IMG/VR virus record: IMGVR_UViG_3300024308_000016
Span: 186,001-250,000 of that record
Direction: 5' to 3' (one strand)
DNA: 64,000 nucleotides
The position numbers and the translations under genes were made by a program. The notes under the pieces were generated by a model. It had not been told where the DNA came from and made no database searches. It was given only the letters and a program-made list of their open reading frames with translations. Position 1 is the stretch's first letter, and the number at the start of each line of letters is the position of its first letter. Positions 12,932 through 57,658 of the stretch are shown in pieces.

Positions 12932-12957
12932 TTTGATTCTCGGAAAGGGGATAAACC

Positions 12958-15144
12958 GTGGCTACTCGTAATACGAATAGCGCCATAGAGGCCTATTTGA
13001 GTGACACAGTCTCTTTGGTGCGATCTCTCGTTGTGAAGTCCGAGATCACAGCCAAAAAGATCAATCAAGCTCTCGTCAAGCAATATGGCGAAGCCGCCGT
13101 GCTCCAGGACTTTCCTGAGACCTGGAAGTACTATATGAACCTGGCCGGTGAGTACCATAAAACCGACCAGATGATGAAAGTCATATCATTGGACACCCAC
13201 GAGTGGATCGATTTCACCGTGGAAAACATGAAGTTGCATATCGCAACTGCCAAGGCTTATCAGCACGGAACACGCTACTACTACAGCCTGGCTCGGAAAT
13301 ACCCGAGCCAGGTGCCATTGATTTTGGCCATCACTAACCCCGTCAACAAGCAGCGCGCCATCGAGGCGCCGGATGTAACCATCTTGGCTTGGCGGCGTGA
13401 CTTGGTGGAGACTCAAGAAGACAACCTCATCTTGGAAATCCAGACCTATATCCGCAACTATCTGTCGCGTAATACGGTCATTGGGTTTAACAACATCTAC
13501 GACTACTACCCGGTTCTTACACTGGCTAACTTGTGGATGAGCCTACCCAGCAAGATCATGAACATCCGGCTGAGGAACTGCAAGACGGAGAAGACCCACT
13601 CCTTCCATATGACGCAGTACCTGGCCAGTCACGGGCGCCTGGATCGTTTCATCCCGTACTTGACGCTCGAACAGGTCATGTACCTGTACCACAACATCGA
13701 CCGCCTCAACAAGCACGCCGGGAAAACCGAGATCTTCAAGGAGCTGATCCACTGGATCCTTGTGCTGCGCCGGGTCCCTCTCAGCGAGTACACGATCCGC
13801 CAGTTGCAAGAGTTTGGCTCTGACATGCTGCCCACTTTGCGAGCCAAGCGAACACCACTGTCGACGCTGGACAATACGGCAGAAGCCGCATATGTGGACA
13901 TGGACATCTTCTTTAAGAAGGAAGCAGGCACCCAAAAGGGAAACCCCCGCTACTTCGAAGTGGCCCTTCCCCGTATCGAGCACTCTTTGAAAACGTTCAA
14001 CGGATCCACCATCCTTACCAAGGACCTGGAGTCAGCCATGGTGGACTACACCAACGCTGTGCCTGACCCTCTTCCAGATGTGATGATGCGCCAGTGGGCG
14101 TACATGGCCACCAACAACCTGTACAACGTGGTCGTGTCCTTCTCGCATCCAGGAAGTGGAGAGAGCTTTAGCCTCATGGCCAAGGACGCTCTGATCTACT
14201 ACAGCTACGTGTACCTGAATGCTCATGGCGTGACAGTGACGAAGATCCCGAACTTCTTCAACCTGAAGTTCCGTCTGAACCCGCTACCCAATAAGGACGA
14301 GCTATACCGCCTGGTGCCGGATAAGTTCCCGGAGCTGTATGACTGGATCGACAAGATCCTCATCCAGCAGCCTCGCCTGTATCCTTGCACATCTATCCAG
14401 ATGTTCAATGATCTCACCACCCAGATCTACAATCGAGCTCTGAGCTACTGGTTGGAAATGGGTGCGATGAATGACCCATTGAAGCGTGGTGTCGCTGGTT
14501 GCATCGTCAGCAAGCTCTATGGCGCGGAGATCATCGAGCTGGCGGAACCCGGGCAGACCATTCAGTCGTGGCTCACTGAAAACAATATGCCGGTGTATGA
14601 CTATACCCGCGAGGAAGCCAATACCATCCTCAAGCAAATCTACGAGAACGCCACAGGTATGGCGCTCGACGACACCAAGAGCTTGAAGGCGATCCAAAAG
14701 GCACTGCTGGAGCTGTTCGGTCAGCAGTCGTCCTACGCCATTCAGTTCATGCGTGAGATCAACGATTCCGACATCATCCCGCTGACGGGCGCTGCTATCC
14801 GGATCGGCGTCGACGGCGAGGAAACTCATGATGAAGTCCACATCCTGGCGCCTGTACGGATACTGGATGTCCAGCAAGAGAGTCATGACAATGTTTATGT
14901 ACCGATCGCTGATATCAAGGTCGAAGCTGACCTCGATCAAATGGCCCATGAGGTCCATCTGGAGGCGGAGGTGCATATCAATCTGGAAGGCCAGCAAGAG
15001 TACTACGTATCCTTGCCTGTGCCTGCTGTCCGCATCGAAGAGCCCGGTATGAGCCCAGACGCTCAGACCGATCGATTCTACCCGATGGACTTCTACAACA
15101 AACTGTCGCCCGCGCAGATCGCTGGTATCGCCAACAACTTGTAA
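12958..15144 (+). CDS. Virion structural protein (baseplate-wedge-like, phiKZ gp128-like)
   Basis: 728 aa; TWKYYMNLAGEYH and HSFH..QYLASH motifs; synteny with portal. Confidence 0.7.
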   Translation: MATRNTNSAIEAYLSDTVSLVRSLVVKSEITAKKINQALVKQYGEAAVLQDFPETWKYYMNLAGEYHKTDQMMKVISLDTHEWIDFTVENMKLHIATAKAYQHGTRYYYSLARKYPSQVPLILAITNPVNKQRAIEAPDVTILAWRRDLVETQEDNLILEIQTYIRNYLSRNTVIGFNNIYDYYPVLTLANLWMSLPSKIMNIRLRNCKTEKTHSFHMTQYLASHGRLDRFIPYLTLEQVMYLYHNIDRLNKHAGKTEIFKELIHWILVLRRVPLSEYTIRQLQEFGSDMLPTLRAKRTPLSTLDNTAEAAYVDMDIFFKKEAGTQKGNPRYFEVALPRIEHSLKTFNGSTILTKDLESAMVDYTNAVPDPLPDVMMRQWAYMATNNLYNVVVSFSHPGSGESFSLMAKDALIYYSYVYLNAHGVTVTKIPNFFNLKFRLNPLPNKDELYRLVPDKFPELYDWIDKILIQQPRLYPCTSIQMFNDLTTQIYNRALSYWLEMGAMNDPLKRGVAGCIVSKLYGAEIIELAEPGQTIQSWLTENNMPVYDYTREEANTILKQIYENATGMALDDTKSLKAIQKALLELFGQQSSYAIQFMREINDSDIIPLTGAAIRIGVDGEETHDEVHILAPVRILDVQQESHDNVYVPIADIKVEADLDQMAHEVHLEAEVHINLEGQQEYYVSLPVPAVRIEEPGMSPDAQTDRFYPMDFYNKLSPAQIAGIANNL

Positions 15145-43357: not shown

Positions 43358-46300
43358 TCAAAGCACTCGCCGGTTATCAAAGGATGAGGTCGACGCTTCC
43401 GCAAACTTCGGTGTCTTGTACACCGGAGCGACGGGTTGCGGGGCCTCGGGCTTGGCGCCTCCTTGTTCAACCATGACTTGTCCCAGTCCGGTCAGTGCCT
43501 GACTCATGCCCTGCAGTATCGGAACGATCTGCGTGACAAGCGTCTCACTGATGGTGGCTACGTACTTATTGGAGTCATTGCCGATTTGGACCAGCTCATC
43601 GATGCCTTGGCTATTTTGGCCCTTGGCGATGGCGGTCAGTGCGGGATCAGGTCTTGCCATGGAGGGGACAGTGATCCGACGCTCAGCTGCTGCCGAAGCT
43701 TTAGCTGGTGCGGCGCTCGCTGTACTCACCGTCCGCATAGCGGAGCTGGGTACATTGAACGACGCGGTCGTGGTAGCGGTAGGTGTCGATCGATCAGCGT
43801 CAGCCGCCACAGCCTTGCCGGTAGTGTTACCTACCTTGGGGCCTCCCATGCCCTTAGGGGCGTAGGGAATGTTGAACTGCTGTGCCTTGTTCTCGATCTT
43901 GTTTTCGATGCGGTCGTACATCTCCGAGGTGGTCAGAGGACGATTGTTCGCATAGAACAGTTTGGCGTTGATGGGGTTGGCCGCTGCCTTTTGGAAGAGG
44001 CTGGCTGCCGGTGTATCGGGAGAGGCACTGAAGAACTTCCTGGCTCCGCCCAGACCCAGGTAGTGGGCCATGTAGCCGTCAGTGAAGTCGGGGTTTGGAC
44101 GTACAGACTCCAAACCCTTCAGATTTTGCTTCAGATACTCCGCACCCATCAAGGTGTTGGCTCTTGGATCAGTGCGATCTTCGTTGCCCTTCAAGCCGTA
44201 CTTGGAGCCGGTCTTGCGCATGGTGTCGTTCCATGCAGCGGGGAAGAACTGGTTCAAGCCGACCGCATTGCCAGCTTTGGCAGCGGGGTTCATACTCGAC
44301 TCCATCGCGCTCATCAAGAGCATGTCGTTGGGATTGACGCCTGCTTCCTTGGCAGCGGAGGTGATGGTGCCTCGGATGCCTTGCTCTGCAGGTTTTCCAC
44401 CACCCACAGATTCGGAAGGACGGGTTTCTCCGTCTTCGGCAAGTTTGCCCTTGTCAGTGTCGATCTTAGCACTTGGCTTGTAGGCCACTTGCTGCGTGCC
44501 CGAGGAGAACTTGTCTGGAGCGCCAGTGGTGGCGATCGCAGCCGCTGTAGGCGCTTGAGCCTGAGCGGTCATGCTCTTTTCCTCGGTGACTCCGGTCTTG
44601 GCCTTGATGCCTTGGTCCGCCTGGCTTGCAGTCTCGCCTGGAACCTGGGGCATTTTCAGATCGTTGATCGGAGAAGCTCCCTTGACCGCTGGGTCAGTGA
44701 CAGTAGCACCGCCCTTGGCGTTGTACAGGTCACGAGCGAGCTTGGGGTTGCGGGTGCCGAGCTTGGAACCCTTGATAGAGCCTTGGCCTCCGCCTCCTCG
44801 TCCCAGCGACGACTGGATCGCAATGTCCGCATAACTCTTGTCGGTTTTGGCCAGTTTCTCCGAGCCTTGGTAGCCGGCTGCTTCGATGTGCCACGTCTCT
44901 CCGCCCACAGGGCGAGTGAAGCCGTACTTGCGAAGCAATCCCATCTGCTCGAGTTCTTCCAGTTGGACGCTGGAGACGTCAAGCGCCAGGCCATGCTCGT
45001 GCATGGAGTTGCCGGGCTTGGCTGCCTTGGCTGGGTTTTGTCGGTGAAGCGCTGCTTGTCTTTGATAGCTTCGGAAAGCCTCATTGACTTGCAAGCTTTT
45101 GCCAGTGGCCTCCCCATACTCCTGGGCCATAGACAAGAAGTGCTTGAGCAGGCGCGGTTGCATCCCTTCCAGGACGGCGTCCTTGCCCAACTTCACGTAC
45201 TTCATGCCGCCGGAGCCATCCGCCATTTGACCACCCGCCAGTGCAGGCACCTTGGTCATCCCGGTGGAGGAGTCCGAGCCATCGGCCTGGCCATTGGAGA
45301 TGATGGTGGAGTTTTGGGTCTTGGACTGGGGAGGATCCTCAGGAGTGGCCACATCGAAGGGCTTGGCACTCGGAGCTTTGTTGAGCTCTCCGACTTGCTT
45401 GGACTCCACCGCAGGGGTGTTGGGGATCGCCTCACTCTTGATCTGATCGCCAGCCGCCACGATGACTGCCTTGGCATTCTTCTTGTCAGCTCCCTTAGGA
45501 TCGATCTCCCCAGCTTTGATCGCCGCTTTGACGCTCTTTTGCTGCTCCAGTCCCAGCGTCTTGATCTTGGCGTTGACCAGATTGAACGCAGGCTGGACGT
45601 TCGTGTTCAGAGAGTTCAGTCCCTTGAACGGAGAAACCGTCACGTCGTAGGGGCCCGACTCGAACGCTGCCTTGGACAGGTATTCGAGCTTTTGTTCGGG
45701 CTTGAGCTTGTCGAGTTCATCGAGCTTGACCTTCATGTCCACCTGAGCCAAGATAGCCAGGTGGTGCAAGAATACGGGTTTGAATCGCTGGTCGATCCAC
45801 TCCGTCAGGTTCTGAACCATCTGCGACTCCTTGGGATCGATGGAGAAGATCTCCAAGATGTCCTTGGTGTCGATGGCACGCTCGTTGATGTAGGGCTGCT
45901 TGCCACGGTATCCGATACGGCCGTCCAGCAGGTACTTCTCCAGGCCCATGACCTGGCTGTTGTACATCTCGGTAGCGTCAGTGCCGTCCAGACCGTACTG
46001 GATCACGCGGATGCGTTGCCAATCGTCGAGTCGGTTGCGGGTGAGGTACTTGTACAGCTTGTAGCCGCCATAAGCGGTTCCAGCCACAGCAGCGGCGCCG
46101 AGCACGACCGGAGAAGTGAGAACAGCCGCCAGCGAAGTGGCTGCGGCTCCCAAAGCGCCGATGATAGCACCGCCGGAACCACCAGCTGCCAGACCTACGG
46201 TCATAGCTGCACGAGCTGCGAAGCCACCGAAGCGGGCAACAGAGGCTGCACCTGGCAGTCGGGCCAACAGACCACCACCTGCCTTAGCGGCACCCGCCAA

Positions 46301-49300
46301 AGGTGTGCCCACTGTCCGAAAAGCTGTCGGGATCTTGCTCAGACCGGAGCCGAGCAAGCTCGCGCCTCCCATCAAGCCGCGACCGAGCAGTCCAGCTCCG
46401 CCTTTGAGGCCGCGACCCAGCAAGGAACCCGCGCCCTTGAGCAGTCCGCCCTTTCCACCCAGACCAAGCAATCCTATCGCCCCACTCATGATAGAGCCAG
46501 CGGCTGATGCGATAGTACCCATCATGCCGGTAGCCATCTTAAAGATGGTACTGAGCATGTCTGAGCCTTCCATGTACTTGTTCTTCTCCAGCCCTGCTTC
46601 GGACTTTTGCTGGGCTTCGAGCTTGCGCTGCTCATTGGCTTGGCGCATGTCTTCGTTTTGTTGCATGCGGTCAGCAGCTCCGCCATCGCGCTGTCCATCA
46701 CCGTCTCGGTCGTTGAACTGGCCCGTAGCCTTGCGGTACGCCTTCATAGCGCGTTGCTTGGCTTTGTTGACCATGTTGCGCATGCCGGAGCCAGACTCTT
46801 GAGAAGTCTCCTCCTGAGCGGGGCCTTGCTGCTGATTGCCGGCTTGGTCCTTATTGCCGGAGAACATACCAGACAAGAAACCTGCACCCTTGGCCAAACT
46901 TCCACCCAGACCTCCGAGCAATCCTGCTCCACGACCGAGCAAGCCTCCCAGACGACCTCCGCGTTTAGCGCCCAGGCCTGCGACCCTGGAGCCAGCCTTA
47001 GAGGCCATAGAGCCGATACCGCCGATGGCGCCCGGAAGCATAGAGGCGACACCTCCGAGCAATCCACCCAAGTTGCCACCAGCGTACTTGTTCATGATAC
47101 GCTGGCCAGTCGGGATCTGGGGACCTAGATCCACGCCAGATGGGAACATGGGACCTACGAAGTCGTCCGTTCCAGGCTGAGGAGCCGAGCCAAACATCTT
47201 GGCCCAGTCTTTCATCTTCTTGATGGTGCTGGAGTTGGCAGCTCCCGTGGTCTTGTCCTTGAGGAAGTCCCCGATACGAGCGCCTTGACCCAAGATAGAG
47301 TCCACGATCTTGGAGTCTTTGCCCACCAAGCTGATGTCCCGGATCTGAGTGAGCAGCGAGCGGTTGGTCTTGTCGACCGAGTCGTCCGATACTTCCTCAG
47401 GTGTCGCCGCCTGCATGGGCTTGGCCCCTGTGCGGTTCAAGATAGAACGCACGCGTCGACCACCCTTGCCCATTGCCAGGAGATCCCGGATCTGTTCGAG
47501 CACTTCTGTGGGCTTTTGCCAGCAGGTGCAGTCTCCGCCGGCTTGGAGCTGGGGAAGAGCTTGCAGTGCCTTGGAGACAGACTCTCCGATAGATGCCGAC
47601 AGCTCTCCCATACGCTCCTTCGACGATGCCCACATTGCGGCCATCCCTTCAGCGGAGTTTTGCCACGCTTGTCCAGCCATGGCTTTACCGTCTTCGTACA
47701 TCTGGCCCGCGCCCTGCACTCCGTGCTGGTACATGCTCTTGGCTTTACCGCCGAAGGACTTGGCTCTATCGCGAGCGAAGTCATACGCCTTGGATGCGCC
47801 GCTCATGAGCATGCCTGCAGCTCCTCGGCCCCGAGTGAACGCCTCGCCGGCCTTCTTCTTGATCCAGTCCAGCGCTTGGCGGGTCAAGGTACGCACAGGC
47901 TTGCCGTCTGCAGTAAACAGGCCGTCGACCATGTCGTCGATCGTCAGAACCACCTTGCCGTGGTGATCGATCACGTTGCCGGAGATGCGCGACAGGTCCT
48001 CCAAGTTCTTGATGGGCTTTCCGGTGCTCTCGTCCTTGTAAGCACCGAGCTCCATGAGCTTGGCGCGCAACACCGGTGCGGGATTGCCCGGCATGTACAC
48101 GTCCTGGGGACCGTTGACCAAGTTGATAGCCATGCCCTTGGCCTTATCGAGCATCATCCGTGCGGTCTTGACGGTGGCGGGCACCTTTTGGAACAACACG
48201 TCAGAACCAAAATCCACAGCTCTGCGAGTAGCGTTGACCGCTGCCTCGTAGACGCTGGACATCAGATTCTTGGCAGGCTCCTTAGCTGCTCCAGCAGCCG
48301 ACTTGCCCATATCCCACCCAGGCATGATCACCTTGTCCTTGAGCCAAGATGCCGTATCGATGGTGGTGCCTGTGAGTTTGGCAGCACCAGCAGCGGCTGC
48401 GTTGACCACACCAGCGATCAGGTTACCCATCAGGCCTTGGCCCTTCAGACCAAACCCGCGGGAAGCCATAGAACCGCCTTCTTGACCGCCCTCGCCCCCA
48501 AAGCCCATGAAACCACCGCCCTTGGCTTGTTGGGCGGAGATCTTCTTGACTTGCTCATCGATACTCTTGAGGTATTGAACGCCTTCTGAACCCACACCAC
48601 TGTCGAACTTCTCACCCAGCGCCTTGATGGCGGCGAGCATGTGACCTTGGGCCGAGATCGGATCGATGGAGGTGCCCCCTGGTGCTGTCTCCTCTCCCAG
48701 ATTTCGGTTCACGTCCTGAGCCATAGGACCGAAGTGCGTGGACTTGCCCAATCCCGCAGCTGCTTTGTAGTTCCAGCTGTAGTTGTCAGTGTTCATGATC
48801 CCCTTCAGGCTAGCTGTGGGGTTCTTGGGTGCGTAGGAGCGGATGTTCTCCTTTTGGGTCTGGTCAGACGTCATCCGGCCGCCTTGGTCGATGAGCTTGT
48901 AGTACTCATCTTCCACGATCTCGTAGTTGCCGTCCTTGTCACGCTTCAAGAAGCCCGCTTCCACCAGTCCTTCAGCATTGCCGTCAGCGATGGCTTGCTG
49001 GATAACGCCTCGGTGGTCCTTCACAGAGCTTCTGAGCTCCGAAGACCGGGACGTGAGCGAATACTTGCGGGTCAGCGCCTCCAGGGAGTCGCCGCTGTAG
49101 TTGGTCTGCAAGATCTTCCTGACCGTTTCCTGGGCTGAAGGGCTCAGGTTGCGGAACTCCACGGTGTCCATCATCCGGTCACCGTCATAGTCGAAGTTGC
49201 GCCTGCGGCTCAACTTGCCCAGATAGTCCTTTACTTCGTCTCGGTCCGCGTCTGGAACAGTGGCACCCTTGGTGAAGTCGTCGTAGGTCTCATTCAGGCG

Positions 49301-50869
49301 ATCCTTGTAACTGGACTCAGATGCTGCCTTCTTGATACCCATCAAGATGTCCGAGGACAGCTCGCGTTGGGTCTTGAACTTGCCGGTGTTGGGATCGTAC
49401 ACAGTCAGTGCCGTGGAGGTGTCTCCAGTGCGCAGCACGGTGATCTCTCGCAAGATGCGGGCCAAGTAGCCTGGGATCACATCGACCTGCGCGCGAGCCA
49501 CTCTCTTGGCGGTGTACAGGGCATCTTCCCCTTCTCCCCCGATGCCAGAGTTCTTGATAGTCATATCCGGCGTTTGATCACCGAAGATATCCATCAGGCC
49601 TTCGAGCATCTCTCGGATAAGACCAGAGGGACCTCCCGCGTAGCCGAAGTCCTGGAACTTGTCAGAGCGTTTGATCCGATCGATCAGACCGCCGGGGTTG
49701 TGCCCATAGCGGCCAGCCAGCATGGAGGCGCGCATGATGTTGGGGTTCTTCTCGGCAAGGGCTTTCAAGCGCTTGGAGACGTTCTTGCTCACCCACTCAC
49801 CAGCGGCAGCCCCCACGCCAGAGCCCACTGTGCGCCACCCCGAGTGCTTTTCCCCGGTGATCTCCGCCATGTCCCGGGCCATTTCGTTTTCGGAGATGAT
49901 GTTCTCCAGCATGTCATCGACCAAGGAGATGTTGTCCTTGAAGTCGTCCATCTGCTCTTTGATCTTGGCTCGGATCTTCTTGCTGGCGTTGGCGATTCGG
50001 TCGGTGGTACCAAACAGGCTGTCCTGGATCGCGCCGAACGCCTTGTTCTTGGCGATGTTGGAGAAACGCTCGGTTTCCTTGATCTTGGCAGCATCCGGCA
50101 GTCCGGTATTCTTCAAGATCCCAGCACCCGTGGTCTCAGCGACCTTGCGGTACTCGTTGAAGCTCTTGACCAGCGAGGCCATAGCGAAGTAGCTCCGGTA
50201 CTGCAGCTCAAGCGACTTCTTTTGGAAGTTCATGTTGAACGTCTGCTGGTAATCCCGGATGCTGTTGACACCGACGGCGATCTGCTGCTGGACCTTAAAC
50301 GAAGTGTTGAAGCGCTTGGTGTCGATCTTGTCGCTCAAGATCTTGCGGGCCTCATCCTCGACGCGATCTTCCTCGGTCTGAGCCATCATGCGCCCAAACG
50401 TCTCACCCAGCATACGCTCCACGCCCTGGTCCACCGCATCGGTGTTGTCCCAGTCGGTCTTGCGCGAGCCGCTCAGGGAGTCCGCCAGTGCCTTGGTCGT
50501 TTGCTTCAGACGCGTGGCCGAATCAGGTACGAGCTTGTCGATCTTTCTCATGATGGAAGCCAGCTGAGGCTTGACTTCCGAGATAGATTGATCGTATAGA
50601 CGCGAGGCATCTGACGTGATCTGATCCGTCGCCTCCCATGCTTTGCCGATGCCCTCGGGCAATGCGTCACGCGCTATCTGCGTATAGGTGGAGGGATCAG
50701 TGAACTTGTTACGCATGCTGGTCTTGACGCCTTCGAGGACGTGGTCGACTGGCTTGCGGTCGCGCTTGGGGCGCTCATCAGGGAAGTCTCCCCCGGAATA
50801 ATCAAAGTCAAGATCCCGATCAAATTCGAAATCCCCGTAATCATTACGGTTATCATCACGAGTCGCCAT
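43358..50869 (-). CDS. Tape-measure / structural peptidoglycan hydrolase (phiKZ gp181-like) with S74-like, M15-peptidase and SLT domains
   Basis: About 2,503 aa; long Gly/Ala helical repeats; SLT motifs AMESSMNP, GLNQF, YMAHYLG; M15 motifs FRS..RQ, SMHEHGLALD, ETWHIE. Confidence 0.85.
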   Translation of the reverse strand: MATRDDNRNDYGDFEFDRDLDFDYSGGDFPDERPKRDRKPVDHVLEGVKTSMRNKFTDPSTYTQIARDALPEGIGKAWEATDQITSDASRLYDQSISEVKPQLASIMRKIDKLVPDSATRLKQTTKALADSLSGSRKTDWDNTDAVDQGVERMLGETFGRMMAQTEEDRVEDEARKILSDKIDTKRFNTSFKVQQQIAVGVNSIRDYQQTFNMNFQKKSLELQYRSYFAMASLVKSFNEYRKVAETTGAGILKNTGLPDAAKIKETERFSNIAKNKAFGAIQDSLFGTTDRIANASKKIRAKIKEQMDDFKDNISLVDDMLENIISENEMARDMAEITGEKHSGWRTVGSGVGAAAGEWVSKNVSKRLKALAEKNPNIMRASMLAGRYGHNPGGLIDRIKRSDKFQDFGYAGGPSGLIREMLEGLMDIFGDQTPDMTIKNSGIGGEGEDALYTAKRVARAQVDVIPGYLARILREITVLRTGDTSTALTVYDPNTGKFKTQRELSSDILMGIKKAASESSYKDRLNETYDDFTKGATVPDADRDEVKDYLGKLSRRRNFDYDGDRMMDTVEFRNLSPSAQETVRKILQTNYSGDSLEALTRKYSLTSRSSELRSSVKDHRGVIQQAIADGNAEGLVEAGFLKRDKDGNYEIVEDEYYKLIDQGGRMTSDQTQKENIRSYAPKNPTASLKGIMNTDNYSWNYKAAAGLGKSTHFGPMAQDVNRNLGEETAPGGTSIDPISAQGHMLAAIKALGEKFDSGVGSEGVQYLKSIDEQVKKISAQQAKGGGFMGFGGEGGQEGGSMASRGFGLKGQGLMGNLIAGVVNAAAAGAAKLTGTTIDTASWLKDKVIMPGWDMGKSAAGAAKEPAKNLMSSVYEAAVNATRRAVDFGSDVLFQKVPATVKTARMMLDKAKGMAINLVNGPQDVYMPGNPAPVLRAKLMELGAYKDESTGKPIKNLEDLSRISGNVIDHHGKVVLTIDDMVDGLFTADGKPVRTLTRQALDWIKKKAGEAFTRGRGAAGMLMSGASKAYDFARDRAKSFGGKAKSMYQHGVQGAGQMYEDGKAMAGQAWQNSAEGMAAMWASSKERMGELSASIGESVSKALQALPQLQAGGDCTCWQKPTEVLEQIRDLLAMGKGGRRVRSILNRTGAKPMQAATPEEVSDDSVDKTNRSLLTQIRDISLVGKDSKIVDSILGQGARIGDFLKDKTTGAANSSTIKKMKDWAKMFGSAPQPGTDDFVGPMFPSGVDLGPQIPTGQRIMNKYAGGNLGGLLGGVASMLPGAIGGIGSMASKAGSRVAGLGAKRGGRLGGLLGRGAGLLGGLGGSLAKGAGFLSGMFSGNKDQAGNQQQGPAQEETSQESGSGMRNMVNKAKQRAMKAYRKATGQFNDRDGDGQRDGGAADRMQQNEDMRQANEQRKLEAQQKSEAGLEKNKYMEGSDMLSTIFKMATGMMGTIASAAGSIMSGAIGLLGLGGKGGLLKGAGSLLGRGLKGGAGLLGRGLMGGASLLGSGLSKIPTAFRTVGTPLAGAAKAGGGLLARLPGAASVARFGGFAARAAMTVGLAAGGSGGAIIGALGAAATSLAAVLTSPVVLGAAAVAGTAYGGYKLYKYLTRNRLDDWQRIRVIQYGLDGTDATEMYNSQVMGLEKYLLDGRIGYRGKQPYINERAIDTKDILEIFSIDPKESQMVQNLTEWIDQRFKPVFLHHLAILAQVDMKVKLDELDKLKPEQKLEYLSKAAFESGPYDVTVSPFKGLNSLNTNVQPAFNLVNAKIKTLGLEQQKSVKAAIKAGEIDPKGADKKNAKAVIVAAGDQIKSEAIPNTPAVESKQVGELNKAPSAKPFDVATPEDPPQSKTQNSTIISNGQADGSDSSTGMTKVPALAGGQMADGSGGMKYVKLGKDAVLEGMQPRLLKHFLSMAQEYGEATGKSLQVNEAFRSYQRQAALHRQNPAKAAKPGNSMHEHGLALDVSSVQLEELEQMGLLRKYGFTRPVGGETWHIEAAGYQGSEKLAKTDKSYADIAIQSSLGRGGGGQGSIKGSKLGTRNPKLARDLYNAKGGATVTDPAVKGASPINDLKMPQVPGETASQADQGIKAKTGVTEEKSMTAQAQAPTAAAIATTGAPDKFSSGTQQVAYKPSAKIDTDKGKLAEDGETRPSESVGGGKPAEQGIRGTITSAAKEAGVNPNDMLLMSAMESSMNPAAKAGNAVGLNQFFPAAWNDTMRKTGSKYGLKGNEDRTDPRANTLMGAEYLKQNLKGLESVRPNPDFTDGYMAHYLGLGGARKFFSASPDTPAASLFQKAAANPINAKLFYANNRPLTTSEMYDRIENKIENKAQQFNIPYAPKGMGGPKVGNTTGKAVAADADRSTPTATTTASFNVPSSAMRTVSTASAAPAKASAAAERRITVPSMARPDPALTAIAKGQNSQGIDELVQIGNDSNKYVATISETLVTQIVPILQGMSQALTGLGQVMVEQGGAKPEAPQPVAPVYKTPKFAEASTSSFDNRRVL

Positions 50870-50925
50870 AGTGCGAACCCTTTCTTTTATTATGCGGACC
50901 AAAAAACACTCAAAGGATCACAGCC

Positions 50926-52946
50926 ATGGCAAAAGACATTGACCCACTGAAGATAGAGCTGCTCATCCCCATGAAGACGGACTTGCAGGGTGTCAAGCCC
51001 GTGCTGGTCATGGACATCATGAGCGGCATGAGCAAGAACTTCCACCCTGAGGGCTTGTTCTCGGTGGAGATCTTCGGTAAAGTCGGAGAAACTACACGCT
51101 CGGCCACCTTCGCCTATATCAACTTGAATATCCCGGTGTTTCACCCGCTGCTGTTCAAGGTGATCTGCGATTTGAAGGAGCTGTACCAAGACATCATGGC
51201 CGGTAAGGCCTACGCAGTGTTCGATGAGGAAAAGAAGGACTTCTTCAAGAGCAACATTGCAGAAGGTGAAACCGGCTTTGCGTTCTTTTTGAAGCACTTC
51301 CCCAAGCTGCAGTTCGAAGAGCGTAAATCCATCACCCGGGCTGAGTACATCCGTCTGGTGGAGATGTACCGCGATAACCCCTTCATCGAGCAACTGGTCA
51401 TCTTGCCCGCCGGTGTGCGGGACTATGTGGTCGAAGAAGACGGCAAGCCTTCGGAAGACGAGATCAACGGTATGTACCGCTCCATCATGGCAGTGGCTGG
51501 CTCCATGGAGAACGTGCGCGCTGATGTGAACCCTGAGTTCATCGATGCGTCCAGATACAACCTGCAAGTCAAGCTGCTGGAGATCTACCGATACCTGATC
51601 GGCCTGATCTTGGGCAAGCACAAGATGGTCCAAGGCGCGTTCTTGAGCCGCAAGGTCTCCAACACCACGCGAAACGTGATCACCTCTTATATCCCGAACG
51701 TGCAAGAGTTCGGCGATGCCAGAAGCGTGCGTGCTGACCAGACGGTGATCGGCCTGTACCAGTTCACCCGAGACATCATGCCGCTGGCGGTGCATGCCAT
51801 TGTGGGCAAGTACCTGCCCAAGGTTTTCACGGGTCCCAATACCCCGGCTCAGCTGGTCAATCCAAAAACCCTGCACAAGGAAATGGTGACCGTCAACCCC
51901 CGGGAGTACAAGAAGTGGATGACCTACGAAGGCATCGAGAAGATGGCCGATCGATTCTCCGAAGAGTCGATGCGCCATTACCCGATCATGATCGAAGGCT
52001 ACTACATGGGCCTCGTGTACAAGGGCAATGACGGCACGTTCAAGTTCATCCAGGACATCGACGAGATCCCGGAGTCCCGCTCCAAAGATAGCGTCACTCC
52101 CATCACCATGGCGGAGTTCCTGTACATGTGCCTGTACGAGGAAGCCCTGGACGCCTGGGGTTATACCACTCGGTATCCTATCTCCGGCTATGGATCGACC
52201 TACCCGGGTGGGGTCGCTCTGAGAACTACCGTGCGATCGGAAGTGCGCACTGAGCTGGACGACTACTGGCAACCGATGCCTCACCAAGCGGTGAGCTTTC
52301 CGTTGCCGGGTGCGCAGTTCTTCAACTCCATGAGCCCAGCTGTCCGCCAAATTGGCCGGCTGGGGGCTGATATAAATACAGCTTTCACTCCCCTAAATCG
52401 CATATACAGCTATCCCAGACGAGGGATGTGAGTGACTAAGGGTGTAAGCGTATATGTCCTTCTGTCTAGTAATAGACAGTCGAAACTTCTTTAATTGCTG
52501 GAAACCCCTGAGAGCCGACCACACCACTGCGAGCGGTAACGTAAAGCGACGGTTTTAAGAAATGGGCGGATTGGGCAATCAGCAGCCAAGCCTCTTACTG
52601 AGAGGAAGGTCCAACGATCATCGGGTAGCTCCGAGTAAAGCCCCAAGCGGGGAAGAAATGGGAAGGGTCCTACCAGGTCATGCTGGGGATCTTGATATGA
52701 TCTGCTCCTCATGGAAACATGAGGCGGGTGTCTGTAGCACACCGGGACTGCGTAGCGAGCAGTCTGGACAATAGGTACGACGGGGACCAATGTTCTCACT
52801 ATTGTGTACTGACCCAGGAAGCCAAGCGAGAAGTCAAGCGTATGCTCGCTAGCAGGGATTATTACATGAACCTGGACGGCACCATGGCGTTCAGCCAAAA
52901 CAACGACTACATCTCTTTGGCGCTCAAGTATCTTACTGCGCGCTGA
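50926..52946 (+). CDS. Virion RNA polymerase beta'-like catalytic subunit (phiKZ gp180-like), spliced: join(50926..52371,52776..52946), 538 aa
   Basis: FHPEGLFSVEIFG, ILPAGVRD and TTRYPI motifs; exon joining restores the RLGAD-YDGD catalytic motif in frame. Confidence 0.9.
52372..52775 (+). ncRNA. Group I self-splicing intron, 404 nt, no homing endonuclease ORF
   Basis: 5' exon ends in U and intron ends in G; P AATTGCTGGAAA, Q AATCAGCAG, R TCCAACGATCA, S TGATATGATC; IGS CGTATATGTC pairs with both exons. Confidence 0.92.
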
Positions 52947-52963: not shown

Positions 52964-55900
52964 ATGGGCTTTCAGCAATACAAGGATTGGTATCGGGATC
53001 ATGGCACACGCAATGCGCTGAGCCTGATGAACGTCGATCCCACGCCGGTCAAGAACCTGCCCCAGGGCTCGACCCTGCACTACCTGGGCTCCGATGATGC
53101 CCCACTGCCTGATCTGTCTGATCCCCTGTTTGCTGGGTACTCTAATAAGATCGAGCTGCACTCCATCACGGAGTACAACGGAGCCACCGAGCCCCACGGC
53201 TCCAAGCTAGCGGTACAGGTGGTCAAACAAACCACGGACTTTGCGTCTCGCAGCAAGCTGTTCCACTACTTGAAGACCCTGAACCTGTCCACAGTCTCCA
53301 ACAGCCAGCTGGTGGTGGTGAGCTACGGCTTCTTGGATTTGATGTACCGCTATCCGGCAGTATCGACTTCCAAGTACTATCAGTTTCGCAACAAACTGCA
53401 GACGTTTGTCTCCACGGTGAACTTCCTGAACCGGGACAAGCCCAGGAACAACTTCATTGTGCTGACGGTGCCATCCGAGCTGGTAGGCCGCAACACGCTG
53501 GACAACCGGGCGCTGGGCCAACCCAAGCAAGTCGCCAGCATCTTTGACACCGAGGAGAAGGTGGTGTTGCGCGAGATGTGGCTGTGGTGTAATCCCGATA
53601 CCCGGGACCATTCGGTCTTCGCTGACATGAGCGAGACTGATATGCGGCACTTGAACTTGATGTTCAAGACTTACACAGGTGAATACACCACGGTCTCGTT
53701 TGGCTATCTGTACAGCTGGATGAAGGGCAACCCCAACTACACCACAGTCTCTGCTGTGATGCAGGTGAGCTTCATCGAGCTGCAAAAGTACTGGCTCAAG
53801 TACTTGATGGTGCTGCAAACTATCAACGCCAATGGTGCATCGCTGGCCGAGCAGGAGAAAGCCGCAGCCGAGGCGATGGTCAAGGCAGAGACCGCCACTG
53901 ATCCCGACAAGGAGGCTCCTGAGGGCGACCAGCCCCAGGAAGAGCGATTTCCCGAAGTACCGACTGAAGGACACTCTGGACTGGGAACAAGTAGCTCAGG
54001 CGACGGGCGTGACACCGCAACAAGCAAGGCTACTGCTGGCGACACTATTGAAGCCGAGATCGATATTACCCAGCAGCTCAAAGAACTCGACGCGGATATA
54101 GCCGCGCTCGATGCACTGGACAAGCGCAAGTTCGACAACAAGTTCGTGGTCAAGAAAGACGCCGATGGTGAAGAGCTCATCGACGTCAAGGACGTGACAC
54201 CGGAAGTATATACCTCCGACATCCCGGAGACTGCTGAAGCCATCGCGGCGAAGATCTTCACCGCCAAGACCGCCAAGCAAGCTCTCCTGGACAAGATCGA
54301 CGCAGCCGCTGATGAAGGCCGCATCTCCGTGTCCGACTACCGCAAGCTCAGCGAGCAAGCCAGGAAGTCCGACCAAGCGCAAGACCCCTTCGGCTCCGAC
54401 AAGACTATTGCCGAGGCTATGAAGATCGAGCCCGGGGAGCTGGAGATCACCCAGCAAGAAGCAGCACTGAATGTGCCGCCCACTGTGCTCGATCCGTCGA
54501 TGGCCGCAGCTCCCCTGTCGGTGATGGATCGCAAGTACAACACCTCTATCATCTACAAGGATGTGCTGAGGTCGGTGCAGGCTATCCAAAAGGCTGGCAT
54601 CATCGTACGTCGCCATGAGGTGGAGACCAAGTACTCGGAAATGGGTACGTTCGATGTGCACACCATCGAGCTCAAACCCGTCAACGGCAACCCCTCCATC
54701 ATCCGGGCACGCATACCGCGCGTCGACGAAGAAGGCATCTTCGTGGTGCGGGGTGTGCGCTACTTGGCGCGTAGCCAGATGGTGGACAAGCCCATCCGCC
54801 GCATCGGTGTCAACCGTGTGGGCCTGACCAGCTACTACGGCAAGAGCTTCGTAGACCGGGCAACCAAGAAAGCCGATAGCTACTTGGAGACCATCATCCG
54901 ACGCCTGAACCGTGGCACCATCGAGCCAGACCAAGACATCCGGGACGTCTCTCCGGGTGATGTGTTCGACAACTACTTCGAAGCGCCCTACATCTACAAC
55001 GGTCTGGCGGCAAAGTTCCGTTCGTTCAGAGCTGGTCCGTACTTGCTGAACATGAACCACAAGGACCGGGAAAAGGCAACGACTCCCGAGATCCTCGCCA
55101 AGCTGGAAGTCAAAGGACGACGCCTGATCGGTCAGGGCCCTGGCTCTCGTCCGCTGGTGGTGGACATGGACAACCAGTTTTACCTGATCGGCCCTGACGG
55201 GGAGACTCCCGTAGGAGACATCTTTGACATCATGAAGATGGACCGCCACAATGCACCTGTGGACTTTGCGGAAGTGAAGGTCTTCTCCAAGGGGATTCCG
55301 GTCGGTGTGTTCATCGGCTACAACCTGGGATTTCGGGCACTGGTCAAGTACCTGGGAGCTCGCCACCGTCTGGTGGAAGGACGCCAGCAAAAGAAGATGG
55401 GACCCTACGAGTACGCCGTGCAGTTCAAGGACGTGGCCTACATCTTTGACCGCAGGGACAAGGCTGCATCATTGGTGCTCGCTGGTTTCCGGGCGTTTGA
55501 GAAGGACACCAAGGCGTACGACGCCGTCGAGTTCGACAACAAGGCCGTCTATACCCGACTGATGGAGTCCCGGGGTCTGACGAGTATCTATCTCAAGGAG
55601 ATGGAGAACTTGGTGGACATGTTCGTTGACCCGATCACCGAGGACTTGCTCAAGGAGCTCAACGAGCCACAGACCTTTATGGGGCTGCTGGTGCGCTCGT
55701 GCGAGTTGCTCGACACCTACCACCATCCGGCGTCCCAGGACATGAACAACCAGCGTGTGCGGGGCTATGAGCGCTTCGCTGGCTTCCTGTACAAGGAGAT
55801 GGCCAACTCGGTAAGGGCATTCAAGTCCAAGAACACGACAGGACGCGCTAAGGTGGACATGAGTCCGTTTGCAGTGTGGTCGCTTGTCACGCGTGACAAC

Positions 55901-57658
55901 TCCGTCAAGCAAGCCGAGGACATCAATCCCATCCAGGCGCTGAAAGGCTCGGAAGCCATCACCTATGTGGGAGAAGGTGGCCGCTCCAAGGAGTCGATGA
56001 ACAAGGCATCCCGCGCTCTGCACACCTCCAACCTGGGCGTGGTGTCGGTCGATGCTTCCGTAGACTCTTCGGACGTGGGTATCAACATCTTTACCTCCGC
56101 CAACCCTGGCTTCAACTCCGTGCGTGGAATGAGCAAGAAGGGTCGTGAGATGGGACCCGCCAACCTCCTGGGCACCAGCGCGATGCTGGCACCCTTTGCG
56201 ATCAATGACGATCAAACAGGTCCGCACTACTGGAGACGGTATTGTGTATCTCCCTCAATTGCGAGAACCCCCTGAGAGCTCCACTACCACTGCTAGCCGC
56301 GAGGCGAAGCGAAGGTTCTAACAAAGCTGGAGATTGGGAAACCCGCAGCCAAGCCTCTCTAGTCAGAGGAAGGTTCAACGACTATGGCAGTTTGTCAGCC
56401 ATAGGGCCGAAGTGGCCCGAAACAGGGAGCATCTCTTAATCTAGAGATGAAGATATAGTCTCGACATCTGGGGAAAACCCAGAGCTGCTCTTATACTAGA
56501 GCGGGGCAAGCGTAACGAACTTGCCTGAAGGTATCGCCAAAACGTGTCGCATTTATCTCCATCCAGCAGGCCCACACCGTGGCCACCACTGGCTACCACG
56601 CACCCGTGGTGCGTACTGGCTACGAGTCCGTGATCGGACAGCGTACTGGTGAGATGTTCGCTTCGGCTGCTCGGATGGACGGCAAGGTGATCTCGGTATC
56701 GGACTCCGGCATCTTGGTGGAGTACGCAGACGGTGAACAAAAGGGCTACACCTTGGGCACGATGTACGGACGTGCGGAAGGCTCCACCTATCCACACAAC
56801 CTCATCACTGAGATGAAGCCCGGTCAGAAGTTCAAGAAAGGCGAGTACATCTCGTACAACACCAACTTCTTTGAACCCGACCCGATCTTGCCAGGCTCCG
56901 TGGTCTACAAGGGTTCCATGCTTACGCGTGTGGCTCTGATCGAATCCTCCAACACCCATGAGGACTCCTCGACTATCAGTGAAGAACTGTCCAAGTCGAT
57001 GACCACCACCACCGCCAAGGTCAAGAAGTACGCCGTGAACTTCCGGCAAAACCTGCTCAACATGGTCAAGATCGGCCAGCAGGTCAACCCTGAAGACATC
57101 ATCATGACCATCGAAGATGAGATCACTGCGATGGACGACAGCTTCGGAGATGCGTCGATGGAGATCCTGGCCGCCCGTGCCAAGAACTCTCCGACGTCCG
57201 GCTACCGTGGCCGAGTCTCTGACATCGATGTGATCTACCACGGCGACAAATCCGATATGTCCGCATCTTTGAAAGCCTTGGCTGATCGCTCCGATCGCCG
57301 AAGAGCCGACAAGGCCAAGGCCACGGGTCGACCTGCTGTGACCGGAGCTGTTGACTCCGACTACTCGCACGACGGTGCACCGCTGATGCTCAACAAAGCG
57401 ATCATCATCGTCTACATCACCGTCTCTGAAGGAGCGGGCGTTGGTGACAAGTTGGTATTCTCCAACCAGCTCAAGAGCGTGATCGGTGAGGTCATGCCCT
57501 ACAAGCTCACCACCAAGTCTGGCCTTCCCGTGCATGCCAAGTTCGGTGCCAAGAGCTTCGCTGCCCGTATCGTGAACTCTATGATCTCGATCGGATTGCG
57601 GGGCGCAGTCCTCGACCGGCTGACTGATGTCGCCGTCGAAGCTTACGAAGGAAAGTAA
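52964..57658 (+). CDS. Virion RNA polymerase beta-like subunit (phiKZ gp178-like), spliced: join(52964..56212,56537..57658), 1456 aa
   Basis: QRVRGYERF, TYVGEGGRS, SVDSSDVG and GVGDKLVFSNQLKSVI motifs; exon joining gives NDD-PKRVAFISIQ. Confidence 0.9.
56213..56536 (+). ncRNA. Group I self-splicing intron, 324 nt, no homing endonuclease ORF
   Basis: P1 GAU|C-AAACA-GGUC with U-G pair; P AATTGCGAGAA, Q AACCCGCAG, R GTTCAACGACTA, S AAGATATAGTCT; terminal G. Confidence 0.94.

What the first reader, a model, noticed from the sequence alone, without database searches (positions are those of the whole stretch)
52372..52775. Group I intron splits the catalytic DxDGD motif of the virion RNA polymerase
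Seen: the gp180-like ORF reads ...RLGAD and then runs into non-conserved residues, while YDGDQ... resumes 404 nt later in another frame. The intervening sequence has group I P/Q/R/S elements, a terminal G, a P7 pairing GATCA/TGATC, and an internal guide (52449-52458) that pairs GAU|AUA (U-G at the cut) and UACG of exon 2. Known: the three Asp residues of this motif bind the catalytic Mg2+. Inference: every virion-packaged RNAP depends on splicing, because the unspliced product lacks two of the three catalytic aspartates. ORF callers miss this structure.
Basis: partly seen in the sequence, partly recalled or inferred. Interest (0 to 1): 0.85.

Follow-up and report, generated by a model that had tools for sequence, protein, structure and literature searches.

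The report
Self-splicing intron in phage RNA polymerase
A 404-base self-splicing (group I) intron sits inside the codons for the metal-binding active site of a giant phage's virion RNA polymerase, which is real but not new in kind, because the model phage phiKZ has an intron at exactly the same codon boundary.

Summary
Window 52372-52775 is a group I intron (Rfam RF00028, 58.3 bits, threshold 50). It splits the phiKZ-gp180-like virion RNA polymerase beta' gene between ...LGAD (exon 1, 50926-52371) and YDGDQ... (exon 2, 52776-52946).

Intron-less relatives, one 92% identical, align across GAD|YDGD without a gap. The proposed guide sequence pairs GAU|AUA with a U.G at the cut. Exon 2 is under purifying selection (28 synonymous against 3 replacement codon changes).

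It is not a new kind. phiKZ gp180 ends ...LGAD* and is followed by the HNH gene gp179, a group I core and an unannotated FDGD... exon. That is the same site, with an endonuclease gene.

It lies in the adjacent gp178-like beta gene, at the site of the published PhiPA3 gp210 intron.

In relatives the DxDGD codons are an intron hot-spot: four main insertion points plus a one-base variant, about 45% of the 120 closest gene calls truncated there, and tandem introns separated by 6- or 12-nt micro-exons.

Verdict: new member of a known kind. Splicing itself is inferred, not shown.

The parts
50926..52371 (+). Exon 1 of the gp180-like virion RNAP beta' (N-terminal part) gene, 482 codons, ending ...GRLGAD
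   Evidence: PHROG 2986 positions 2-484/539, E 3e-163. 33% identical end-to-end to phiKZ gp180. 92% identical to intron-less P0001.
52372..52775 (+). Group I intron 1 (404 nt, no endonuclease ORF)
   Evidence: RF00028 at 58.3 bits. Family covariation. No Pfam domain in internal ORFs.
52369..52374 (+). P1 5' strand: exon GAU + intron AUA. The splice-site U is 52371.
   Evidence: Pairs with 52453-52458. GAU/GUC is invariant in all 13 homologues, and intron +1 covaries with the base 5' of GUC.
52375..52448 (+). Long structured P1 loop (L1). This is where relatives carry their endonuclease genes.
   Evidence: Local fold z = -2.6. phiKZ gp179, the L048 208-aa ORF and the L053 597-aa ORF lie between the 5' splice site and the guide.
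52449..52458 (+). Internal guide sequence: CGUA (possible P10) + UAUGUC (P1 3' strand)
   Evidence: Read from the sequence. Family alignment columns 47-57 of A3.
52462..52479 (+). P2 hairpin CUGUCUA-GUAA-UAGACAG
   Evidence: Fold. Covarying helix 1 in A3.
52486..52665 (+). P3 (52486-91/52660-65) enclosing P4 (52496-501/52580-84), P5 and extensions, P6 (52585-87/52608-10, 52591-94/52602-05), the P7 5' strand, P7.1 (52621-25/52630-34) and P7.2 (52641-44/52649-52)
   Evidence: RNAalifold consensus and pair counts. P7.1/P7.2 coordinates in this copy were read by eye from the sequence.
52616..52620 (+). P7 5' strand GAUCA (G-binding helix)
   Evidence: Pairs with 52698-52702. 100% paired in 13 introns, with two covarying positions (helix 11).
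52666..52691 (+). P8
   Evidence: Helix 14: 5 of 6 pairs show compensatory change.
52698..52702 (+). P7 3' strand UGAUC
52707..52763 (+). P9 (52707-13/52718-24, GAAA loop), P9.1 (52727-31/52739-43), P9.2 (52747-51/52759-63)
   Evidence: Helices 15-16. P9.2 was read from the sequence.
52775..52775 (+). Terminal (omega) G. The tail CUGGACAAUAGG is shared with homologous introns.
52776..52946 (+). Exon 2, 56 codons + stop: YDGDQCSHYCVLTQEAK...
   Evidence: PHROG 2986 positions 485-538. 53/56 identical to P0001, with 28 synonymous against 3 replacement codon differences.
52964..56212 (+). Exon 1 of the gp178-like vRNAP beta gene, ending ...AINDD
   Evidence: PHROG 3148. Aligns to phiKZ gp178 up to D1071-D1072.
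56213..56536 (+). Group I intron 2 (324 nt, ORF-less), same family as intron 1
   Evidence: RF00028 at 65.2 bits. It is a row of alignment A3.
56537..57658 (+). Exon 2 of the gp178-like gene, starting PKRVAFISIQQ
   Evidence: Aligns to phiKZ gp178 PKRINFISIQQ. PHROG 3148 positions 1065-1422.
43358..50902 (-). gp181-like giant virion protein (2514 aa), divergently transcribed. Serves as a synteny marker.
   Evidence: Same arrangement in phiKZ, RP12, FLC9 and L005, with VanY/SLT domains in relatives.

Best explanation
Window 52372-52775 is a group I intron of the phage IA type (it has P7.1/P7.2) with no endonuclease gene. [quoted passage not shown]

Proposed mechanism:
1. The guide sequence UAUGUC (52453-58) pairs with exon GAU + intron AUA to form P1, with U52371.G52456 at the cut.
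2. Exogenous G bound in P7 attacks after U52371.
3. The freed exon then attacks after G52775, joining GCUGAU to UACGAC.
4. The mRNA now encodes a 538-aa protein with ...LGADYDGDQ....

Without splicing, translation ends 19 codons into the intron. That product carries only one of the three catalytic aspartates.

Shown here: family membership, boundaries, conserved covarying structure, orthology, the empty site in relatives, and selection on exon 2. Inferred: that it splices efficiently, by itself, in vivo.

The adjacent beta gene carries a second intron of the same family, so two vRNAP subunits need splicing.
For: - Rfam: RF00028 full-length match above threshold, and the only family hit in the window even at E 0.1.
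- Exon contiguity: the two exons occupy adjacent positions of PHROG 2986. P0001, P0002, P0004-6, P0008, P0010, RP12 and FLC9 proteins align without a gap across the junction.
- Empty site: the DNA empty site in the 92%-identical relative reads GCTGAC|TATGAC.
- Covariation: in 13 homologous introns 92.6% of cells are paired, against 36-45% when partners are slid. The covariation score is 0.643 against 0.05-0.14, with 0/500 shuffles reaching it and 45 of 63 pairs showing compensatory change. P7 is 100% paired.
- P1: all 13 introns follow GAT and carry GTC in the guide. Intron +1 pairs with the base 5' of GTC in 11/13, using four pair types.
- Same site in phiKZ: phiKZ gp180 is split at this codon boundary by an HNH-bearing group I intron (92 bits).
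- Selection: exon 2 has 28 synonymous against 3 replacement codon changes versus the intron-less relative.
- Literature: gp180 is a virion RNAP subunit carrying DFDGD (PMC10612078).
Against: - No RNA evidence. The spliced 24-mer junction was not found in the metagenome contig collection, which is uninformative.
- This copy has the lowest Rfam score of the family (58 bits, against 55-92 for the relatives that reached the threshold). It deviates at a nearly invariant J6/7 base and in J8/7 (CUU instead of GAA/GGU).
- P1 is short (6 bp). An alternative local pairing of the exon with GUCCU is thermodynamically preferred in isolation.
- P10 is not conserved in relatives.
- For phiKZ itself, long-read RNA data did not show spliced reads (PMC10914365).
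Confidence: 0.9

Rival explanations
1. The intron is a decayed, no longer splicing relic, and the gene is a pseudogene. The phage would then rely on something else or be defective.
For: Lowest Rfam score in its family and a few deviations at conserved joining bases. It has no endonuclease ORF, so no homing pressure maintains it.
Against: Every core helix is intact. Exon 2 keeps its frame and shows 28 synonymous against 3 replacement changes. vRNAP is needed for early transcription in this phage group (PMC10612078, PMC11620839). ORF-less introns at the same site recur in L014, L050, L065 and L089.
Confidence: 0.05
2. The gene is truly split. A 501-aa N-terminal piece and a separately translated C-terminal piece, starting at the in-frame ATG 52719 (75 aa), assemble without RNA splicing.
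For: ATG 52719 is in frame with exon 2. Jumbo-phage RNAP subunits are already split into separate polypeptides (PMC7598289).
Against: The active-site loop would be cut between Asp1 and Asp2. ATG 52719 lies inside the P9 stem with no Shine-Dalgarno sequence. The intervening RNA is a covarying group I ribozyme with U.G at the cut and a terminal G placed exactly to restore the motif. Neither the 19 read-through codons nor the 19 codons before Y are conserved in relatives.
Confidence: 0.02
3. It is a genuine group I intron, but splicing in vivo needs a protein helper (a phage or host factor, or an endonuclease/maturase supplied in trans). It would then act as a regulated step that times vRNAP production.
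For: Short P1 and a competing local helix. A long 78-nt L1 insert. No splicing reads were reported for the phiKZ introns under one set of conditions (PMC10914365).
Against: There is no evidence for any cofactor. Related phage IA introns are generally self-splicing (established knowledge). The core is complete.
Confidence: 0.1

Closest known systems
phiKZ gp180/gp179 intron (Pseudomonas phage phiKZ, NC_004629)
   Same: Same gene (vRNAP beta' N-terminal part). Same codon boundary (LGAD|FDGD against LGAD|YDGD). Same intron family, with GAU/GUC P1, the insert in the P1 loop, and P7.1/P7.2.
   Different: The phiKZ intron is 1443 nt and carries the HNH_3 endonuclease gene gp179 in the P1 loop. The window's intron is 404 nt with no ORF. 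The cores are only about 52% identical.
PhiPA3 gp210 intron in the vRNAP beta gene gp211/209 (Birkholz et al. 2024, PMC11620839)
   Same: A group I intron in a virion RNAP gene, placed right after catalytic-region aspartates. The window's second intron (56213-56536) sits at this very site, after DD = phiKZ gp178 D1071-D1072.
   Different: It is in a different subunit from intron 1. The PhiPA3 intron encodes a nicking HNH endonuclease shown to act in phage-phage competition. Both window introns lack an endonuclease. The 92% relative L005 has an HNH_3 ORF at that site.
phiKZ gp55/gp56 intron (nvRNAP beta')
   Same: It splits the same catalytic motif of the paralogous polymerase, N|ADFDGD. Its 3' part is nearly identical to that of the phiKZ gp180 intron.
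   Different: It lies 6 nt upstream of the window's site, in the non-virion enzyme, and it carries an HNH ORF.
Classical phage group I introns (T4 td/nrdB, SPO1 and Bastille DNA polymerase, LUZ24, Twort)
   Same: Self-splicing IA-type introns inserted at conserved catalytic codons of essential nucleotide-metabolism or polymerase genes. Core sequence similarity to many of them.
   Different: The host gene is a multisubunit RNAP subunit. The optional insert sits in the P1 loop rather than in the P6/P8/P9 loops (the loop positions in the classical introns are from my own knowledge).

Membership tests
Group I intron (Rfam RF00028) | Scores above the curated covariance-model threshold over the full model | tested here: met
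   58.3 bits against a threshold of 50, model positions 1-253, E 3e-12.
Group I intron (Rfam RF00028) | Conserved core helices P3-P8 supported by compensatory changes in homologues | tested here: met
   13-intron alignment A3: 92.6% of cells paired, 45/63 pairs with changes on both sides, 0/500 shuffles reach the observed score, slid controls 36-45% paired.
Group I intron (Rfam RF00028) | P7 pseudoknot helix forming the G-binding site | tested here: met
   GAUCA 52616-20 / UGAUC 52698-702. Covaries as GACUA/UAGUC and GACCA/UGGUC. 100% paired.
Group I intron (Rfam RF00028) | P1 with a U.G wobble at the 5' splice site, formed by an internal guide sequence | tested here: met
   GAU|AUA pairs with UAUGUC, with U52371.G52456. 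GAU/GUC is invariant in 13 introns, and +1 covaries with four pair types in 11/13.
Group I intron (Rfam RF00028) | Terminal guanosine at the 3' splice site, with exon ligation restoring the reading frame | tested here: met
   G52775. The joined exons match intron-less proteins residue for residue.
Group I intron (Rfam RF00028) | P10 pairing between the guide and the 3' exon | tested here: inconclusive
   CGUA 52449-52 / UACG 52776-79 exists, but no equivalent pairing was seen in L089, L009A, L014 or phiKZ.
Group I intron (Rfam RF00028) | GTP-dependent self-splicing | not testable with these tools
   No RNA data. The junction 24-mer is absent from metagenome contigs.
Subgroup IA (phage-type) group I introns | Extra hairpins P7.1/P7.2 between P7 and P3' | tested here: met
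   52621-34 and 52641-52. Helices 12 and 13 covary across the family. The finer assignment IA2 was not tested.
Mobile (homing) group I intron | Intron-encoded homing endonuclease | tested here: not met
   No ORF with a Pfam domain inside the intron. Relatives at the same site do carry ORFs: phiKZ gp179 (HNH_3), L048 and L053.
phiKZ gp180-type vRNAP beta' subunit | End-to-end similarity and conserved neighbourhood (gp181-like gene divergent, gp178-like gene downstream) | tested here: met
   E 4e-95 over residues 1-482 against 1-490. Synteny. Virion packaging itself is known only for phiKZ (PMC10612078).
Intein | In-frame protein insert without stops, with a Hint domain | tested here: not met
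   Stop at 52429-31 in the exon 1 frame, a frame change of 2, and no Pfam hit.
Group II intron | Match to group II models | tested here: not met
   No Rfam hit other than RF00028 at E up to 0.1.

The most novel reading that the evidence does not exclude
The two ORF-less introns of this window may belong to one intron lineage whose guide core GUC recognises the Asp codon GAU. That lineage may have spread among the catalytic-aspartate codons of both vRNAP genes by guide-directed (reverse-splicing-like) transposition, as well as by endonuclease homing.

What fits this reading:
- In relatives the GUC-guided lineage occupies D|x, xD|G and DGD| in beta' and DD| in beta. A group I intron with a different guide (GCCGUC, pairing with exon GACGGU) sits at DG|D.
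- Tandem copies occur, separated by 6-nt (TTCGAT) or 12-nt micro-exons.
- The tandem pair in L046 are each other's closest relatives.

This would make the polymerase active-site codons an intron hot-spot of a kind I did not find described in the held literature.
Probability: 0.3. Interest if true: 0.6.

Novelty: new member of a known kind. Interest (0 to 1): 0.4.

Why it matters
For annotation, the gene is routinely mis-called. 54 of the 120 closest database proteins stop inside the DxDGD motif. Even the phiKZ RefSeq record ends gp180 at ...LGAD and leaves the FDGD exon unannotated. Active-site residues of the virion polymerase are therefore missing from protein sets used for structure prediction and phylogeny.

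For biology, early infection by these phages depends on a packaged polymerase, two of whose subunits can be made only after RNA splicing. The intron lineage marks catalytic Asp codons in both subunits.

The related PhiPA3 intron endonuclease has been shown to act as a weapon between co-infecting phages. The pattern of occupied, ORF-less and empty sites among close relatives is therefore a record of such conflicts. The window's own case adds a clean ORF-less example, not a new principle.

Tried and rejected
- Megablast of the gene against cultured phages found nothing. The nearest isolates are only about 42% identical in protein.
- An MFE fold of the whole intron is not better than shuffles (z = -0.7). 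Single-sequence folding is uninformative here, so I used comparative analysis instead.
- The first automated guide-sequence finder failed on several introns and showed that three of my hand-set intron coordinates were wrong. I redid it from alignment columns with corrected boundaries.
- Ceyssens 2014 (PMC4178840) could not be read. The prior description of the phiKZ gp180 intron therefore rests on a secondary citation (PMC11512511) and on my own reading of the phiKZ sequence.
- The spliced-junction search in metagenome contigs found nothing.
- A search for the intron's 3' tail in IMG/VR found only the source contig.
- Intein, group II intron, split gene with an internal start, and translational bypass were considered and rejected on the grounds given in the membership tests and rival explanations.
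- Co-conversion next to the site: identity to the 92% relative drops to 62% in the 60 nt upstream of the junction, while that relative matches a 64% relative almost perfectly there. This is suggestive of local recombination but too weak to claim.

Full report
**What is at the coordinates**

The + strand ORF 50926-52431 reads ...AVRQIGRLGAD, then 19 unrelated codons (INTAFTPLNRIYSYPRRGM), then a stop. At 52776, in another frame, the sequence reads YDGDQCSHYCVLTQEAKREVK... to a stop at 52944-52946.

Rfam's group I intron model (RF00028) matches 52436-52724 over its full length at 58.3 bits (threshold 50, E 3e-12). A second match lies at 56203-56484 (65.2 bits). Nothing else in the 64 kb scores even at E 0.1.

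**The two protein pieces are one gene**

PHROG 2986 ('RNA polymerase beta subunit') matches exon 1 at profile positions 2-484 and exon 2 at 485-538 of 539. A search of the large protein collection gave 425 relatives. The closest, P0001, is 92% identical, 538 aa long and uninterrupted.

P0001, six other full-length relatives and the proteins of Ralstonia phage RP12 and Burkholderia phage FLC9 align across ...GAD|YDGD... with no gap and no overlap. At the DNA level the empty site of the 92% relative reads GCTGAC|TATGAC where the window has GCTGAT-[404 nt]-TACGAC.

The last exon base is U52371, the last intron base is G52775, and no other choice of a U/G pair of boundaries restores the motif.

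**Which gene it is**

Exon 1 aligns end-to-end with phiKZ gp180 (33% identity, E 4e-95), and both end on LGAD. Exon 2 aligns with the unannotated phiKZ sequence FDGDTVSF....

The neighbourhood is that of phiKZ gp181/gp180/gp178. A 2514-aa protein is transcribed divergently (43358-50902), and a gp178-like gene lies just downstream. RP12, FLC9 and the metagenomic relative L005 have the same arrangement.

gp180 is a subunit of the virion-packaged RNA polymerase and carries the Mg-binding DFDGD motif (PMC10612078). Virion packaging for the window's own phage is inferred from this orthology. The window itself is part of IMG/VR contig IMGVR_UViG_3300024308_000016, 272,393 bp. No cultured phage is close to it.

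**Structure of the intron**

I collected homologous introns from 80 related IMG/VR loci, from phiKZ and from the window's second intron, and aligned 13 of them (A3). RNAalifold recovers P2, P3, P4, P5 with extensions, P6, P7.1, P7.2, P8, P9 and P9.1.

With P7 added as a pseudoknot, the pair counts were as follows:
- 92.6% of cells form standard pairs, against 36-45% when the partners are slid by 1-3 columns.
- 45 of 63 pairs show compensatory changes.
- The covariation score is 0.643, against 0.05-0.14 for the slid controls.
- None of 500 shuffles reaches the observed values.

The hairpins P7.1 and P7.2 place the intron in subgroup IA, the usual phage type.

**P1 and the guide sequence**

All 13 introns follow the Asp codon GAU, and all carry GUC at the same alignment position just 5' of P2. 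This gives G-C, A-U and the U.G wobble at the cut. The first intron base pairs with the base 5' of GUC in 11 of 13 introns, using four pair types: A-U seven times, U-A twice, G-C once and C-G once.

In the window the pairing is the longest of the set: GAU|AUA with UAUGUC (52453-58). I found no equivalent in the closest homologue L089 or in other family members, so I regard it as unproven.

Between the splice site and the guide lie 78 nt that fold into an extended hairpin (z = -2.6). In relatives this same position, the P1 loop, holds the endonuclease genes: phiKZ gp179 (HNH_3), a 208-aa ORF in L048 and a 597-aa ORF in L053. The window's intron has no ORF with any Pfam match.

**Is it functional?**

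Direct evidence is lacking. Indirect evidence is good. All core helices are intact. Exon 2, which can be translated only after splicing, differs from the intron-less relative in 31 codons, of which 28 are synonymous.

Three points argue for caution. This copy has the lowest Rfam score in its family and deviates at a few conserved joining bases. A competing local helix exists. Long-read RNA data for phiKZ did not show spliced reads for its predicted introns (PMC10914365).

**Comparison with what is known**

phiKZ gp180 is annotated as 490 aa ending ...LGAD*. Downstream lie gp179 (HNH_3), a group I core (RF00028, 92 bits), and then TTCGACGGGGAC... = FDGD..., directly after a G. phiKZ therefore has an endonuclease-bearing intron at the identical codon boundary.

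Intron endonucleases gp56, gp72 and gp179 were predicted in 2002. Introns in gp55 and gp180 are cited from Ceyssens 2014 by PMC11512511. I could not read the primary paper.

phiKZ gp55, the paralogous non-virion beta' gene, is split 6 nt further upstream (N|ADFDGD) by the gp56 intron.

The window's second intron (56213-56536, 324 nt, ORF-less) follows ...AINDD, which corresponds to phiKZ gp178 D1071-D1072. This is the site of the PhiPA3 gp210 intron, whose endonuclease mediates competition with phiKZ (PMC11620839). The 92% relative L005 has an empty site 1 but carries an HNH_3 ORF at site 2.

**Context seen in relatives**

Of the 120 closest proteins, 65 are at least 520 aa and full length. 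One 514-aa call (P0092) is short but still reads through the motif. The other 54 stop inside the motif. By my hand tally of the tails printed, they divide as follows:
- about 28-30 after GAD
- 16 after GADxD
- 7 after GADxDG
- 1 after GADxDGD

The third position was verified in L088. There a group I intron with guide GCCGUC pairs with exon GACGGU.

Of the 80 IMG/VR loci, 14 are split.

L009 and L012 each hold two threshold-passing group I introns separated by the 6-nt micro-exon TTCGAT. L046 holds two separated by the 12-nt micro-exon TTCGACGGAGAT. L062 seems shifted by one base.

In a tree of the cores, the two L046 introns are sisters (99/98 support). The window's intron 1 is closest to a site-2 intron, L009B, at 66% identity. 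So introns do not sort strictly by site.

No paper in the held library contained both 'group I intron' and 'DFDGD'.

**Verdict**

The feature is a new, ORF-less member of a known kind. Its interest is moderate and comes mainly from the hot-spot pattern around it.

Noticed in passing
window 56213-56536 (+): Second ORF-less group I intron (RF00028, 65.2 bits) in the adjacent gp178-like vRNAP beta gene. It sits after ...AINDD and before PKRVAF..., the same site as the PhiPA3 gp210 intron (phiKZ gp178 D1071-D1072). It belongs to the same intron family as intron 1 (GAU/GUC P1).
   Followed up: yes
L009 7429-8182; L012 7429-8324; L046 7450-8456: Tandem group I introns inside the DxDGD codons of relatives, separated by micro-exons of 6 nt (TTCGAT = F-D) or 12 nt (TTCGACGGAGAT = F-D-G-D). 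The two L046 introns are each other's closest relatives.
   Followed up: partly
proteins P0003-P0114; L088 5420-5840; L062: Four main intron insertion points within the 15 nt encoding DxDGD (D|x, xD|G, DG|D, DGD|), plus a possible +1-nt variant in L062. 54 of the 120 closest gene calls are truncated inside the motif.
   Followed up: partly
L004 (phiKZ NC_004629) 10165-10346 (-) and 11787-13259 (-): The RefSeq record ends gp180 at ...LGAD (490 aa). It leaves the 60-codon exon 2 (FDGDTVSF...) unannotated, and the intron is not annotated either.
   Followed up: yes
L096 (phiKZ) 11186-12542: phiKZ nvRNAP beta' gp55 is split N|ADFDGD by the gp56 HNH intron. Its last roughly 75 nt are almost identical to the 3' end of the phiKZ gp180 intron, which suggests recent exchange between the two introns.
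   Followed up: partly
L017 6352-6833: A relative whose exon 1 ends GADFD and whose next matching exon starts after DGD. I could not find codons for G-D, so the joined product would lack the third aspartate. This is unexplained: it could be an assembly error, a dead gene or a missed micro-exon.
   Followed up: partly
window 52312-52371 against L005 and L089: In the 60 nt upstream of the insertion site, identity to the 92% relative falls to 62%. In the same stretch that relative is nearly identical to a 64% relative (CACGTCCCCCGTATGGGCGCTGA). This is possible local recombination or co-conversion next to the intron site.
   Followed up: partly
L091, L092, L095 (metagenome contigs): The intron tail CTGGACAATA[AG]G followed by TAYGAYGG (YDGD) also occurs in genes that do not match the gp180 profile. 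These may be other RNAP beta' paralogues.
   Followed up: no
window 52719-52946 (+): An ATG inside the P9 stem is in frame with exon 2 (75-aa ORF). It has no ribosome-binding site. I considered it only as a rival reading.
   Followed up: yes
L005 12955-13884: The closest relative (92% identical gp180-like protein) has an empty site 1 but carries a 309-aa HNH_3/NUMOD1 ORF between the two halves of its gp178-like gene. Occupancy of the two sites therefore differs between near-identical phages.
   Followed up: partly
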